From Salpingoeca rosetta (lineage: Eukaryota > Protista > Choanoflagellata), in the NCBI GenBank assembly GCA_033442325.1, contig JAWQFM010000036.1, positions 449,860-461,836 on the forward strand: a DNA stretch of 11,977 nt. The letters run 5' to 3'. Below are positions 1 through 3,804 of this stretch, piece after piece. Numbering within the stretch: the stretch's first letter is position 1; each line of letters opens with the position of its first letter. A program made the position numbers and the translations under genes. A model generated the notes under the pieces. It was not told where the DNA came from. It was given only the letters and a program-made list of their open reading frames with translations, and did no database searches.

Positions 1-62
1 AACAAGATACCGCACAACAGCCTCGTGACATTGAAGCTCGCTGTCCACAGCGGTGTTCGGCC
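1..62 (-). pseudogene. Ankyrin gene exon 6 (partial) with a 1-nt deletion: frameshifted pseudo-exon or sequencing error
   Basis: Identical to exon 5 over the visible part except that the + strand reads cgtgacattg (24-33) versus cgtgaccattg (411-421). Translation shifts to GRTPLWTASFN-VTRLLCGIL. Confidence 0.6.
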
Positions 63-1808
63 CTGATGCACCATCCCATTCAATCCGTACAAATCAACAC
101 AACACCACATAACCACACAACACAGTGGTGAGCGTGAGAACAACACACAACACACAACACACATGCACATTCAGCTGCAGTAATCATGCCTGCTCATGTG
201 CAATAATGCCACGCACACACATACATGCAACATGTCAAACATCAACACGACCACCACAAACAACAACAGCAACGCACGCAGCGCAGCCAACAGCACGCGT
301 GCACACACAGCAGTAACAACACAACCTTAAAACACAACGAAAAACACGTACATCGTTCATCGCCTTGTGCACGTCTGCTCCCTGCTCAACAAGATACCGC
401 ACAACAGCCTCGTGACCATTGAAGCTCGCTGTCCACAGCGGTGTTCGGCCCTGATGCACCATCCCATTCAATCCGTACAAATCAACACAGCACCACACAA
501 TCACACGTACACAGTGGCAAAGGGTGAGAACAACACAAAGCACACAAGCACTCTCAGCTGCAGTAATCATGCCAGCTTGTATGTGCAGCAATGCGCCACA
601 CAAACATACACGCACACACAAGCAGCAGCATCAACACATGCATCACACAACCAGCATGAGTGCACACACAGCAGTAACAACACAACCTTAAAACAAAACA
701 GAAAAAACGTACATCGTTCTTTGCCTGGTGTACGTCTGCTCCCTGCTCAGCAAGATACCGCACAACAGCCTCGTGGCCATTGAAGCTCGCTGTCCACAGC
801 GGCGTTCGGCCCTGATGCACCATTCCATTCAATCCACACAAATCAACAACACAACATGAACCACACGTACACGTGCACAACAAAGTGACAAGGGTGAGAA
901 CAACACACAACACAAAACACACATGCACATTCAGCTGCAGCAATTATATCTGCTCATGTGCAATAACACACAACACAAACATACACACACATTCACTTCA
1001 AAAAATAACAACACCACCACCACCACAACCAGCAGCATCAACACATGCATCACACAACCAGCATGAGTGCACACACAGCAGTAACAACACAATCTTGCCA
1101 CAAAACTAAAACGCGTACATCGTTCATCGCCTGGTGCACGTCAGCTCCCTGCTCAACAAGATACCGCACAACAGCCTCGTAGCCTTCCTGACTCACAATA
1201 TGCAGCGGTATTGCGCCCTGATGCACCATTCCATTCAATCCGCACAAAGCAACAACACACACATGCACATTCAGCTGCAGTAATCATACCTGCTCATGTG
1301 CAATAATGCCACACACATGAACCCACACACGTCCACACGCCGCCTCAAAACATCAACACGACCACCACAAACAACAACAGCAACACACGCAGCACAGCCA
1401 ACAGCATGTGTGCACACACAACAATAACAACACAATCTTGCCACGAAACAGGAAAAGACACCTCATTCGCTGCCCTATTGACGTCTGCTCCCTGCTCAAC
1501 AAGATACCGCACAACTGCCTCATGTCCGAAAGCACTTGTCCAGTGCAGCCCAGATGCGCCCTGCAGAACCCCATGTCAATGGTCAGCGACAACCCATGAG
1601 TCTGTGTTACGCCAAGCTCACTTTTCTCCCAATCGCAACCAAGTTCACTCAAAGCACAGAGCACAGGGATTGGCAAACTCACGAATTTTTCATCCCGCTC
1701 CTCGTTGACGTTCGGCTTTGCTCCACCTTTGTCTGGATCACCTTCCAACAGCAGGCGCTTGACCAGGTCCAGGTCCCCCTGTTTACAAGCGTGAATCAGC
1801 GCGCTCAT
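1..1808 (-). CDS. Ankyrin-repeat protein gene, 5' part (spliced; continues beyond left edge). Exons 1808-1683, 1560-1462, 1217-1119, 811-713, 450-352, 62-<1
   Basis: ATG at 1808. All five introns are GT..AG and phase 0. Spliced product: MSALIHACKQGDLDLVKRLLLEGDPDKGGAKPNVNEERDEKF / GASGLHWTSAFGHEAVVRYLVEQGADVNRAANE / GAIPLHIVSQEGYEAVVRYLVEQGADVHQAMND / GRTPLWTASFNGHEAVVRYLAEQGADVHQAKND / GRTPLWTASFNGHEAVVRYLVEQGADVHKAMND / GRTPLWTASFN... This matches the ankyrin consensus G-x-TPLH-x-A-x-x-x-GH-x-x-x-V-x-x-L-x-x-x-GADVN. Confidence 0.93.
352..450 (-). CDS. Ankyrin gene exon 5 (99 nt, one repeat)
   Basis: CATCAG| acceptor and |GTACGT donor; encodes GRTPLWTASFNGHEAVVRYLVEQGADVHKAMND. Confidence 0.9.
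713..811 (-). CDS. Ankyrin gene exon 4 (99 nt, one repeat)
   Basis: CATCAG| acceptor and |GTACGT donor; encodes GRTPLWTASFNGHEAVVRYLAEQGADVHQAKND. Confidence 0.9.
1119..1217 (-). CDS. Ankyrin gene exon 3 (99 nt, one repeat)
   Basis: CATCAG| acceptor and |GTACGC donor; encodes GAIPLHIVSQEGYEAVVRYLVEQGADVHQAMND. Confidence 0.9.
1462..1560 (-). CDS. Ankyrin gene exon 2 (99 nt, one repeat)
   Basis: TGCAG| acceptor and |GTGTCT donor; encodes GASGLHWTSAFGHEAVVRYLVEQGADVNRAANE. Confidence 0.9.
1683..1808 (-). CDS. Ankyrin gene exon 1 (42 codons, N-capping-type partial repeat)
   Basis: ATG..TTC followed by donor GTGAGT at 1682. ALIHACKQGDLDLVKRLL is an ankyrin helix-turn-helix. Confidence 0.88.
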
Positions 1809-2345
1809 GCTTGCGACGACGGAGTGCGTTGTTCGAGCGTGTCTGCGTGTGTCTGTGTGTATGTGTGTGTCTGTGTGTGTGTGTGAGTGTGCGTGTGAGT
1901 ATGTGTGTGTGATCGCGCTGATGCTGTTCCCTGCTTGTCTGCTGTGCTTTGCTTGCCGTGTCTTCGTAGACTGTGCCTCTGTGGGTTTGATGTGTCCTTC
2001 TCAGCGCTTGTTGTCTGCGTGAGCTGCTGTGACTGTGTCCTTCTTCGCGTCCTCAGCTTCTCTGCTGTTGTCCTTCTCTGGCTGTTCGCTTGGCTTGATT
2101 TCCGTTGAATGATTTCCACCAAATTTCTCCACCATCGCGACACGAAACAGCATAAAGTGTAGCACTTGGAGCCTGCAACCGTTGCTGCTGTGAGACCGAC
2201 ACGACCACCTGTGGTGCATGCGTGCTCAACCAGCAGTCATTCAGCCAGGCATCCAGCCATCCACGCAGGCAGGCAGTTGACACGAGGTGCAGACATAGTT
2301 GCTTCGGGCTTATATTAGGCGGTAGTAGTGTTGGTGGGTTTGAGG
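1809..2345. promoter_or_regulatory. Divergent intergenic region holding the 5' UTRs and a putative bidirectional promoter
   Basis: 537 nt between the oppositely oriented ATGs at 1808 (-) and 2346 (+). Contains a (TG)n tract at ~1846-1911. No specific promoter element can be supported. Confidence 0.5.
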
Positions 2346-2735
2346 ATGAGGCTAAGGACAGGACGGGTGCGATCGCTGTTGCTGCTGCTGCTGCTGGGCG
2401 TTGTGGCGCTTTTGGCAGTGCAGCTGCACCACGTGTACATCTCGCAACAAGAGCAGCAAGCGGATGGGGACGACGCAATGCTGCTGGGACCAGATGCGCG
2501 ACGCGAGCCGCAGCCGCAGCAGCGCTGGTCGTTCCTCTGCTTCCTGCTGCCGACAGCAGCATGCATGCATGCTGACAACAGCGGTGCACATGATTTGGGC
2601 ACAAAGGCGACCTTGAGTCAGCAGGCTCACGAAGAGCAGAACCGTCAGAACCAACAAAGCAACAGTGCTACCACAACCACAACCACAACCACAACCACAA
2701 CCACAACAACCACAACAACCACAACCACCACCACC

Positions 2736-2772
<37 letters not shown>

Positions 2773-2801
2773 CTACAACCACAACTACAACCACAACAAC
2801 T

Positions 2802-2832
<31 letters not shown>

Positions 2833-3488
2833 CTACAACTACAACTACAACTACCACGAAAACAACGCCACAGAAGGGAGTGCAGGCATACACGCTGATC
2901 GCCGGAGAACAGGAGAGGGCCAACGACCCAGCGCAGTCGGCAGTCGTGCCAAACCGCGCCCACGCGCTGCTGTGGTGCCACGGATACAGCAAGGCAATCC
3001 TGCTGCAAGCCAACGTGACAAGCAGCCCTGCTGACCTGGACCCATACCCTCCCCGTGACGTTCAGTGCGTGCACCCGGCCCTCCTCGGCCCATCACACCA
3101 TGACGGTGATGGCGATGGCGAAGAGCAAGGACGTGAGAATGATGACGATCACCACCGTCAGTTCCGTGTGTCTCGGCGGGGTGTAAGCATGCTGCCACCA
3201 CACACGACCAACACCGACAAGGATGGTGATGACGGTGGTGTGCTGCCCCGCCTCCTCATTGCCATCATCAGCGGTGGCAGCAATGAGACGCTCGCACGTG
3301 CGCAGTTCCGGCCCATGGTGAATCTGCATGCGAACCAGGAGCGCGAGGCCAACAGGGAGGCGTGCTTCGAGACATATGGCAACGACGACCTGCTGTTCAT
3401 CACCAACGAAGCGGTGCCACGCGGTTCACATCGCGTCCATCTTGACCCCAAGTACGAGGCCGGCGGCAGGGACGGCCTCCCATACAAG
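2346..3488 (+). CDS. Exon 1: signal anchor, poly-Thr stem, start of GT31 domain
   Basis: Open frame from ATG 2346 to AAG|GTGCGG. PRLLIAIISG...REACFETYGNDDLLFIT...GRDGLPYK resembles the GT31 N-terminal strands and the 'L..K' helix. Confidence 0.85.
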
Positions 3489-3804
3489 GTGCGGTTGTCT
3501 GTGTGTGTGTGTGTCTGTGTGTGTCTGTGTGTGTCTGCGTGTCTGTGTGTCTGTGTGTGTGAGTATGTGTGTGCGTGTGTGTGTCTGTGTCTGTGTCTGC
3601 GTCTACATGTACGTACAGAGCGCCCTTGCGTCTGCACGCCCTGACCCGTATGACAATTCATCTTCATATCCTTTCACATTCTCTCTTCTCTCTGTTCTCT
3701 GTTCTTTATTCTGCCGAGTGCAGGTCCTTGGCACGTGGAAATACCTCTATGACAACCACATCGACGACTACGACTGGTTCATGAAGGTCCGGAGCGCGCG
3801 TGCA

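What the first reader, a model, noticed from the sequence alone, without database searches (positions are those of the whole stretch)
1..1560. Cassette-like ankyrin array: 99-nt phase-0 exons duplicated with their introns, variable on the binding face (candidate diversified-binder system)
Seen: four complete and one partial cassette, each one ankyrin repeat flanked by phase-0 introns, so any cassette can be added, lost, swapped or skipped in frame. Divergence is very uneven. Exons 3 and 5 differ at 17 of 39 nt in codons 1-13 (mostly non-synonymous; GAIPLHIVSQEGY vs GRTPLWTASFNGH) but at only 2 of 60 nt in codons 14-33. EAVVRYL(V/A)EQGADV is near-invariant in all four complete copies. Established: the beta-turn and first helix form the ankyrin target-binding surface (the region randomised in DARPins), and one-repeat-per-exon shuffling is known for LRR/TPR candidate immune genes in the brown alga Ectocarpus. 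Inference: this may be an exon-shuffling or alternative-splicing recognition repertoire in a unicellular holozoan. Caveat: 99-nt ankyrin exons alone are common.
Basis: partly seen in the sequence, partly recalled or inferred. Interest (0 to 1): 0.78.

Follow-up and report, generated by a model that had tools for sequence, protein, structure and literature searches.

The report
Ankyrin exon cassettes of Roco-TIR gene
The repeated 99-base exons are real: they encode the ankyrin-repeat front end of a choanoflagellate Roco GTPase-TIR gene, one of about 39 immune-receptor-like paralogs. The array has been reshuffled by recombination over evolutionary time, but nothing here shows a special diversity-generating system.

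Summary
On the minus strand, window 1808..1 carries an ATG exon, four complete 99-nt phase-0 ankyrin exons and one partial exon.

The array is the 5' part of Salpingoeca rosetta PTSG_13160. It runs into a 4,359-N gap at the window edge. Beyond the gap the gene continues as Roc, COR-A/B and TIR. A complete sister gene on contig C28 (PTSG_08757) has five cassettes.

The Roc/COR exon has about 39 paralogous loci, and about 35 are followed by TIR. Other members carry ankyrin or RI-type LRR front ends.

Cassette units are recombinant mosaics: exon and intron histories are decoupled, and the PHI-like test gives P<0.0002. Codons 14-27 are conserved at synonymous sites too (pS 0.045 against 0.26), which points to homogenisation rather than selection on the protein alone. 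Variable codons fall on canonical binding-face positions but have pN/pS about 0.8-1.0, not above 1.

Intron-homologous cassettes exist at only these two loci. No evidence of cassette skipping was found, and transcripts could not be examined.

Verdict: a recently expanded tandem-exon array evolving in concert, inside an NLR-like Roco-TIR family, parallel to brown-algal LRR-ROCO genes. Other agents in this scan had already noted the family on other DNA.

The parts
1683..1808 (-). Exon 1 of PTSG_13160: ATG plus 42 codons, an N-terminal capping-type ankyrin repeat, ending in phase 0
   Evidence: Pfam Ank E=8.8e-4; identical to residues 1-42 of public model P0012
1561..1682 (-). Intron 1 (122 nt, GT..AG), not homologous to the cassette introns
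   Evidence: conserved with the C28 locus
1462..1560 (-). Exon 2, 99 nt: ankyrin repeat GASGLHWTSAFGHEAVVRYLVEQGADVNRAANE
   Evidence: 1 nt different from its C28 counterpart
1218..1461 (-). Intron 2 (244 nt), first of the homologous cassette introns
1119..1217 (-). Cassette c1, 99 nt: GAIPLHIVSQEGYEAVVRYLVEQGADVHQAMND (a helix-1 type found only here)
812..1118 (-). Intron 3 (307 nt), a mosaic: the 5' part resembles its neighbours in C36, the 3' part resembles C28 introns 4 and 5
713..811 (-). Cassette c2, 99 nt: GRTPLWTASFNGHEAVVRYLAEQGADVHQAKND
451..712 (-). Intron 4 (262 nt)
352..450 (-). Cassette c3, 99 nt: GRTPLWTASFNGHEAVVRYLVEQGADVHKAMND
   Evidence: Pfam Ank E=2e-8
63..351 (-). Intron 5 (289 nt), nearly identical to the intron before cassette 3 of the C28 locus
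   Evidence: unit 351..1 is 99.4% identical to C28
1..62 (-). Partial cassette c4, cut by the window and contig edge next to a 4,359-N gap; carries a 1-nt deletion that shifts the frame
1809..2130 (-). 5' flank and leader, CA-rich on the transcript strand, conserved (~94%) with the C28 sister locus

Best explanation
Window 1..1808 (minus strand) is the 5' part of Salpingoeca rosetta gene PTSG_13160. It encodes the N-terminal ankyrin-repeat domain of a kinase-less Roco protein with the layout Ank(n)-Roc-COR-A/B-TIR.

Each repeat sits on its own 99-nt phase-0 exon. This layout is shared with older paralogs on C8 and C4. In the lineage leading to the C36 and C28 sister genes, the array recently grew by tandem duplication of exon-plus-intron units of about 345-410 nt. 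Unequal crossing-over and gene conversion then kept reshuffling it, both within the array and between the two loci.

This homogenised the helix-2/loop core (codons 14-27) and patches of intron. Differences remain in the beta-turn and helix-1 codons (1-13 and 28-33), where constraint is weak.

Inferred, not shown: the array is the target-binding sensor of an NLR-like switch, in which repeats feed a Roc-COR GTPase that controls a TIR output. Diversity would arise in the germ line across about 39 paralogs, not by a somatic or splicing mechanism.
For: Exon structure and Ank identity.

Gene continuity across the gap: the Roc, COR-A, COR-B and TIR exons lie in L016. The public model P0012 (PTSG_13160) begins with the window's exon 1 and carries Ank, Roc (66 bits), COR-A (67 bits) and TIR_2 (25.8 bits).

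Sister gene on C28: the layout is complete, with five cassettes plus two terminal Ank exons, and TIR_2 scores 32.4 bits, above the cut-off.

Family size: the COR exon has about 39 loci and the TIR exon follows about 35 of them. At least 27 S. rosetta models carry LRR and/or Ank + Roc + COR + TIR.

Ancestral one-repeat-per-exon layout: seen in the C8 and C4 paralogs, whose introns are no longer alignable.

Mosaicism:
- The nearest neighbour changes segment by segment.
- 754 of 1431 informative site pairs fail the four-gamete test.
- The PHI-like permutation test gives P<0.0002.
- C28 cassettes 4 and 5 differ at 3/313 in their introns but 18/99 in their exons. C28 cassettes 1 and 5 differ at 2/99 in their exons but 22% in their introns.

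Homogenisation rather than protein-level selection: pS is 0.045 in codons 14-27, against 0.26 in codons 1-13 and 0.18 in the introns.

Inter-locus exchange: window 430..1 is 99.4% identical to C28, against a background dS of 0.14.

Weak constraint on the variable codons: pN/pS is 0.8-1.0 there, against 0.18 in the COR exon.
Against: The array is cut by a gap of unknown content, so its real size and order are not known.

The near-identity of window 1..430 to C28, together with the frameshift at the contig edge, could be an assembly chimera rather than gene conversion.

pN/pS near 1, averaged over codons that include invariant G, P and L, does not exclude positive selection at a few sites. At position 2, pN is 0.63 against pS 0.10.

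No functional or expression data were available. The sensor role and the NLR-like logic are inferred from domain order alone. TIR_2 in the C36 copy scores just under Pfam's cut-off.
Confidence: 0.72

Rival explanations
1. Selection-maintained diversification. Gene conversion homogenises the scaffold, while selection for new or different binding specificities preserves or drives amino-acid differences on the concave face. On this reading the array is an adaptively diversified germ-line binder, as claimed for brown-algal LRR-ROCO genes.
For: The variable residues coincide with canonical target-contact positions: exon positions 2, 10, 11 and 31-33 correspond to consensus positions 5, 13, 14 and 1-3. 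pN/pS at these positions is 0.97, against 0.18 in the COR exon. At position 2, pN is 0.63 against pS 0.10. Conversion tracts stop short of codons 1-13 although they cover the flanking intron and codons 14-27. The family context is immune-like. A precedent exists with positive selection on LRR concave-face sites (PMC11378527).
Against: No partition has pN/pS significantly above 1. Synonymous divergence is just as high in the variable codons (pS 0.26), so the difference between the two exon halves is one of genealogy, not of amino-acid rate. The older arrays give 0.5 on the same codons. The same positions are the least conserved in ankyrin repeats generally (own knowledge; this is why DARPins randomise them). 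Only eight complete, recombining cassettes were available, so power is very low.
Confidence: 0.18
2. Splicing-based repertoire. Because all cassettes are symmetric phase-0 exons, the cell makes many receptor isoforms by skipping cassettes or choosing among them, in the manner of Dscam or the alternative splicing reported for brown-algal ROCO LRR exons.
For: Any cassette can be skipped in frame. Cassette introns carry conserved patches. Alternative splicing of tandem repeat exons is reported for brown-algal ROCOs (PMC11378527). The public C28 model lacks two cassettes that are present in the DNA.
Against: All splice sites are strong and uniform (GTACG...CATCAG|GG). The missing cassettes in PTSG_08757 are replaced by a chimeric cassette whose junction lies inside the identical 25-nt core. 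That pattern suggests a collapsed transcript or assembly rather than exon skipping. Annotated 'variant' isoforms in the family are N-terminal truncations only. Inverted repeats between unique and cassette introns are only CA/GT low complexity. The conserved intron hairpin is no more stable than shuffled sequence, with z from -1.5 to +1.05. No transcript data could be examined.
Confidence: 0.05
3. Assembly artefact. Part of what is seen (the partial fifth cassette, its near-identity to C28, the frameshift, perhaps the cassette order) comes from misassembled or collapsed repeats at a contig end, not from biology.
For: The array ends at a 4,359-N gap. The last 430 nt are 99.4% identical to C28, while the rest of the locus differs by 5-20%. 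There is a 1-nt deletion in a GG run 29 nt from the contig end. Public gene models disagree with the DNA at both loci.
Against: The four complete cassettes and their introns differ from every C28 unit by many substitutions and indels, so they are not copies of C28 reads. Divergence to C28 falls gradually over about 200 nt, as expected at a conversion-tract boundary. C28 itself is gap-free and shows the same mosaic pattern.
Confidence: 0.1

Closest known systems
Brown-algal LRR-ROCO candidate immune receptors (Ectocarpus, Saccharina; Zambounis 2012 as cited in Teng et al. 2024, PMC11378527)
   Same: Both are expanded families of Roc-COR GTPases with an N-terminal repeat domain. In both, every repeat is a separate, phase-symmetric exon, repeat exons are shuffled, and variation falls on the presumed ligand-binding face.
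   Different: Here the repeats are ankyrin (99 nt, phase 0), not LRR (72 nt, phase 2). The output is a C-terminal TIR, which is absent in the algal genes. Only two loci carry the recently shuffled cassettes. Positive selection is not demonstrated here (pN/pS about 1), and alternative splicing is untested. The host is a choanoflagellate.
Animal ROCO proteins with ankyrin repeats (LRRK2, DAPK1)
   Same: Ankyrin repeats lie N-terminal to a Roc-COR tandem. There are weak Pfam matches to ANK_LRRK2.
   Different: No kinase, LRR, WD40 or death domain was found in this gene, which has TIR instead. The UniRef name 'non-specific serine/threonine protein kinase' is not borne out by Pfam. Copy number is about 39 rather than one to a few.
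NLR / plant TNL and other STAND-type innate immune receptors
   Same: Both have a three-part logic of repeat sensor, NTPase switch and TIR-type effector. Both show large lineage-specific expansion. The RI-type LRRs in some paralogs resemble animal NLR LRRs.
   Different: The NTPase is a Ras-like Roc-COR, not NACHT or NB-ARC. The domain order is reversed, with repeats N-terminal and TIR C-terminal. The similarity is one of functional logic only and is inferred.
Vertebrate ankyrin genes and other Ank proteins with one 33-residue repeat per 99-bp exon (own knowledge)
   Same: Both have one repeat per 99-nt exon and grow by tandem exon duplication.
   Different: In those genes the introns are old and unrelated. 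Here the introns are still about 80% alike and recombining, which shows recent and ongoing turnover.
DARPin library design (PMC8229355; position numbers from own knowledge of Binz et al. 2003)
   Same: A constant helix-2 and loop framework is combined with variation at beta-turn and helix-1 surface positions on the concave face.
   Different: DARPins are a man-made design. Natural ankyrin repeats in general vary most at these positions, so the resemblance is expected and is not evidence of a diversification mechanism.

Membership tests
Ankyrin repeat (Pfam PF00023/PF12796) | 33-residue repeat matching the Ank profile above the gathering score | tested here: met
   A single cassette (450..352) scores 34.5 bits against a cut-off of 21.1. 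The whole model P0012 scores 110 bits.
ROCO family | Roc GTPase immediately followed by a COR domain in the same protein | tested here: met
   Roc scores 66 bits (cut-off 27) and COR-A 67 bits (cut-off 35.3) in P0012, which starts with the window's exon 1. COR-B scores 19-23 bits, below its cut-off of 27. The link runs across a 4,359-N gap and rests on the scaffold, the public model and the gap-free C28 sister gene.
ROCO family | Intact P-loop and DxxG motifs in Roc | tested here: met
   GEGRAGKTT and DLGGQ can be read directly in the L016 and L018 exons. GTP binding and hydrolysis were not tested.
TIR-domain protein | TIR profile match above the gathering score | tested here: inconclusive
   TIR_2 scores 25.8 bits in the C36 protein (cut-off 28), 32.4 bits in the C28 sister and 32.1 bits in the C8 paralog. 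There was no sequence hit to solved TIR structures.
TIR-domain protein | Catalytic glutamate of NADase-type TIRs | not tested
It was not checked here because it lies outside the finding and would need a structure model or a curated alignment.
Exon-shuffled ROCO receptors (brown-alga type) | One repeat per exon with symmetric intron phases | tested here: met
   All exons are 99 nt, phase 0-0 and bounded by AG/GT in C36, C28, C8 and C4.
Exon-shuffled ROCO receptors (brown-alga type) | Evidence that repeat exons have been shuffled or duplicated | tested here: met
   Exon and intron genealogies are decoupled, the four-gamete test fails for 754 of 1431 site pairs, and the PHI-like test gives P<0.0002.
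Exon-shuffled ROCO receptors (brown-alga type) | Positive selection at binding-face sites | tested here: inconclusive
   By Nei-Gojobori counting, pN/pS is 0.81-1.16 for codons 1-13, 0.97 at DARPin-type positions, and 0.5-0.65 when the older arrays are included. There are few sites, the sequences recombine, and no likelihood site model was available.
Exon-shuffled ROCO receptors (brown-alga type) | Alternative splicing of the repeat exons | not testable with these tools
   No transcript data were available.
Dscam-type mutually exclusive splicing | Docking site complementary to a selector sequence in front of each cassette | tested here: not met
   Only CA/GT low-complexity complementarity was found. 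The public model contains c1, c2 and c3 together.
VLR-type somatic cassette assembly | Large genomic library of donor cassettes flanking an incomplete germ-line gene | tested here: not met
   Intron-homologous units occur only at C36 and C28. Cassettes with at least 73% amino-acid identity occur only there. Both genes are complete transcription units.
NLR / STAND | NACHT or NB-ARC NTPase | tested here: not met
   Pfam finds Roc/Ras and COR only.

The most novel reading that the evidence does not exclude
The S. rosetta Ank-Roco-TIR genes are a convergent counterpart of the brown-algal LRR-ROCO system. On this reading they form a recognition repertoire in the closest relatives of animals, in which phase-0 ankyrin cassettes are continually reshuffled between paralogs. 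The C36 array may hold about 8 more cassettes in the gap. The cassettes would also be alternatively included in transcripts, with selection keeping the binding faces different while conversion keeps the scaffold constant.
Probability: 0.1. Interest if true: 0.75.

Novelty: new variant of a known kind. Interest (0 to 1): 0.42.

Why it matters
Choanoflagellates are the sister group of animals, and published surveys found no NLRs with Death or CARD domains in them (PMC6040629). A family of about 39 genes with the layout repeat-Roco-TIR would be a different answer to intracellular sensing at the root of animals.

This locus shows how its sensor arrays change: whole-exon gain, loss and exchange, helped by symmetric exons and still-homologous introns. 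This is the same route described for brown-algal ROCO receptors.

There is also a practical result. The two public gene models, PTSG_13160 and PTSG_08757, are wrong in the repeat region.

The specific claim of a diversity-generating system is not supported so far.

Tried and rejected
1. Plus-strand reading. The plus-strand ORFs are low-complexity (H/T/C/N-rich); the gene is on the minus strand.

2. Dscam-like docking and selector pairing. The inverted repeats are only CA/GT microsatellite complementarity between the 5' leader and the GT-rich introns.

3. A conserved intron hairpin (UGCACAU...AUGUGCA). Its folding energy is no better than shuffled sequence, with z from -1.5 to +1.05.

4. Sequence search of the TIR exon against solved structures. 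Only a chance hit at E=0.78 was found.

5. Fetching all 39 paralog loci. I sampled C8, C4, C29, C26 and C1 instead.

7. The large protein search (search of protein representatives) was not run, because the family scans and the word search had settled the identity.

Exons were searched one by one by reference, and the public models returned by the word search were used for whole-protein scans.

9. A VLR-like donor cassette library was rejected, because cassettes of this type occur at only two loci.
Full report
**1. What is in the sequence**

Read on the minus strand, window 1808..1 is the start of a gene.
- Exon 1 (1808..1683) opens with ATG, has 42 codons and ends in phase 0. It is followed by a 122-nt GT..AG intron.
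- Four exons of exactly 99 nt follow (1560..1462, 1217..1119, 811..713, 450..352), then a partial one (62..1).
- Each complete exon is bounded by AG and GT and is open in frame 0.
- A single cassette matches Pfam Ank at E=2e-8.
- Tandem Repeats Finder sees units of 343-361 nt.

Two things were missed. The partial cassette lacks one G (AATG-TCAC), which shifts its frame. The window also starts immediately after 4,359 N in its scaffold (C36:445501-449859).

**2. The rest of the gene**

Beyond the gap, on the same strand, lie exons for a Roc GTPase (GEGRAGKTT, DLGGQ), COR-A, COR-B and a TIR domain.

A word search with a paralog's open frame returned named Salpingoeca rosetta proteins.
- P0012 (PTSG_13160, 1,245 aa) begins with the window's exon 1. 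It carries Ank, Roc (66 bits), COR-A (67 bits) and TIR_2 (25.8 bits, just under the cut-off of 28).
- That public model runs exon 1, exon 2, c1, c2 and c3. It then reads six intron-coded residues (VRVFRC) and jumps over the gap into the last ankyrin exon. It is therefore forced by the gap and is not a true transcript structure.

I did not build or search a joined spliced protein. Exons were searched by reference, and the public models were used for whole-protein scans.

**3. The sister gene**

A DNA search with one exon-plus-intron unit found intron-homologous units only at C36 and at C28:857035-859085. The C28 locus is free of gaps.

It reads: ATG exon, exon 2, five cassettes, two different terminal ankyrin exons, Roc, COR, TIR.

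Its public model P0032 (PTSG_08757; TIR_2 32.4 bits, above the cut-off) contains only exon 2, a chimera of cassette 1 with cassette 2 or 3, then c4 and c5. That is two cassettes fewer than the DNA. The junction must lie inside the identical core of the cassettes. This looks like a collapsed transcript or an older assembly rather than exon skipping.

If the gap size is right, the interval hidden in C36 is about 3.2 kb longer than the matching 1.16 kb of C28. That is room for roughly 8 more cassettes (arithmetic). This is unverified.

**4. The family**

- The Roc/COR exon of the C28 gene has about 39 paralogous loci in the 55.4-Mb genome, most at 69-76% identity. A TIR exon follows about 35 of them.
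- The C8 and C4 paralogs also have one ankyrin repeat per 99-nt phase-0 exon. Their introns are no longer alignable, apart from one pair in C8. The exon-per-repeat layout is therefore old, and the C36/C28 expansion is recent.
- The C29 and C26 paralogs carry RI-type LRRs plus about three ankyrin repeats in front of Roc. Most public models carry LRR_6 + Ank + Roc + COR + TIR.
- Earlier agents of this scan reached the same family picture on other DNA (s1-432384, s1-432458). The Roc-COR-TIR part behind the gap was noted separately (s1-434474). This report joins that part to the ankyrin array.

**5. How the cassettes evolve**

In an alignment of nine units (upstream intron plus exon), the nearest neighbour changes from segment to segment.
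- C28 cassette 5 has the intron of cassette 4 (0-3% different) but the exon of cassette 1 (2-3% different).
- W_c1 shares the first 100 nt of its intron with C28_c1 and the second half of its exon with C28_c2 and C28_c3.
- 754 of 1431 pairs of informative sites fail the four-gamete test.
- Incompatibility is clustered by distance: the PHI-like statistic is 0.351 observed against 0.527 permuted, with P<0.0002.
- Between the loci, background divergence is dS 0.14 in the COR exon (omega 0.18) and 5-20% in non-coding DNA. However, window 430..1 is 99.4% identical to C28, and exon 2 with its flanks is also nearly identical.

These are the marks of unequal crossing-over and gene conversion. This agrees with the first-stage note s1-434510.

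**6. Is the binding face diversified?**

Mean pairwise nucleotide difference is 0.18 in the introns, 0.22 in codons 1-13 and 0.085 in codons 14-33.

| Partition | pS | pN | pN/pS |
|---|---|---|---|
| Codons 1-13 | 0.26 | 0.21 | 0.81 |
| Codons 14-27 | 0.045 | 0.035 | 0.77 |
| Codons 28-33 | 0.23 | 0.19 | 0.82 |

These are Nei-Gojobori counts. The two parts of the exon differ in depth of genealogy at silent and replacement sites alike. They do not differ in the ratio of replacement to silent change. The constant half has been homogenised, or is younger, and some intron patches are equally conserved.

Per codon, the most variable residues are exon positions 2, 6, 7, 10 and 31. Positions 2, 10, 11, 30, 32 and 33 correspond to consensus positions 5, 13, 14, 33, 2 and 3. 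These are the DARPin-randomised positions on the concave face (PMC8229355 for the concave face; the position numbers are from my own knowledge). At those positions pN/pS is 0.97 for the eight recent cassettes and 0.65 for 18 cassettes including C8 and C4.

The older arrays give about 0.5 for codons 1-13. Codons 14-27 give 0.2 in C8 and 0.4 in C4.

The face is therefore weakly constrained, as in ankyrin repeats generally. Positive selection is neither shown nor excluded: the sites are few, the sequences recombine, and no likelihood model was available.

**7. Splicing**

Every cassette can be skipped in frame, but nothing found suggests that this happens.
- Splice sites are uniform and strong.
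- Annotated 'variant' proteins in the family are N-terminal truncations.
- Complementarity between unique and cassette introns is only CA/GT low complexity.
- A conserved intron hairpin is no more stable than shuffled sequence.
- Transcript data were not available.

**8. Comparison with what is known**

The closest described system is the brown-algal LRR-ROCO family. There, each LRR is a 72-bp phase-2 exon, exons are shuffled, four concave-face sites are under positive selection, and the tandem exons are alternatively spliced (PMC11378527). That paper also lists ANK-ROCO and TPR-ROCO-TIR layouts in other lineages.

Richter et al. noted Ank associated with TIR in choanoflagellates but did not mention Roc (PMC6040629). 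I found no paper describing this S. rosetta family.

The present locus shares the ROCO core, the repeat-per-exon layout and the shuffling. It differs in repeat type, phase, TIR output, host and scale, and selection and splicing are unproven.

**9. Verdict**

It is not supported as a dedicated diversity-generating or splicing repertoire.

It does sit inside a large, immune-receptor-like gene family that is of real interest.

Noticed in passing
window 333-351 and the gap left of window 1; public protein P0012 residues 175-181: The public model PTSG_13160 reads 18 nt of intron 5 (VRVFRC) and then splices across the 4,359-N gap into the last ankyrin exon. The annotated protein is therefore wrong in the repeat region and lacks an unknown number of repeats.
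   Followed up: yes
L018 7850-8737 (C28:857849-858736); public protein P0032 residues 76-108: The public model PTSG_08757 carries one chimeric cassette (first 20 residues of c1, last 13 of c2 or c3) where the DNA has three cassettes. The junction falls in the identical core, where only a GC-AG 'intron' would fit. Collapsed transcript evidence or an older collapsed assembly is likely.
   Followed up: partly
G000:C13:807815-816095, plus strand: About 20 matches to the 33-residue cassette (47-65% identity) are spaced a few hundred bases apart. This looks like another, much longer one-repeat-per-exon ankyrin array. It is not near any Roc/COR hit.
   Followed up: no
window 1809-1900 versus 157-225, 597-625, 903-996, 1255-1392: The CA-rich 5' leader is complementary (up to 28 nt, 86%) to GT-rich tracts in every cassette intron. 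Since GT/CA microsatellites are everywhere in this window, I treat this as low-complexity chance.
   Followed up: partly
window 2328-3644 (+), especially 2673-2866: The divergently oriented neighbouring ORF contains an (ACA)n run coding for about 65 consecutive threonines. Only about 520 nt separate its start from the ATG of the ankyrin gene, so the two may share a promoter region.
   Followed up: no
public models P0001-P0027: UniRef names nearly all family members 'non-specific serine/threonine protein kinase', yet Pfam finds no kinase domain in P0012, P0032 or P0010. The name seems to have been carried over from LRRK-type Roco proteins.
   Followed up: partly
G000:C32:761375-762964 (minus): The Roc/COR paralog here lies in an uninterrupted open frame of 3,129 residues, far longer than the other members.
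   Followed up: no
L033 (C29:890600-895600) and L034 (C26:12700-17700): In the LRR-type paralogs, each RI-type leucine-rich repeat (NSIGDEGAVALAEMLKHNTTL...) also appears to sit on its own small exon. Modular repeat exons are therefore not limited to the ankyrin-type members.
   Followed up: no
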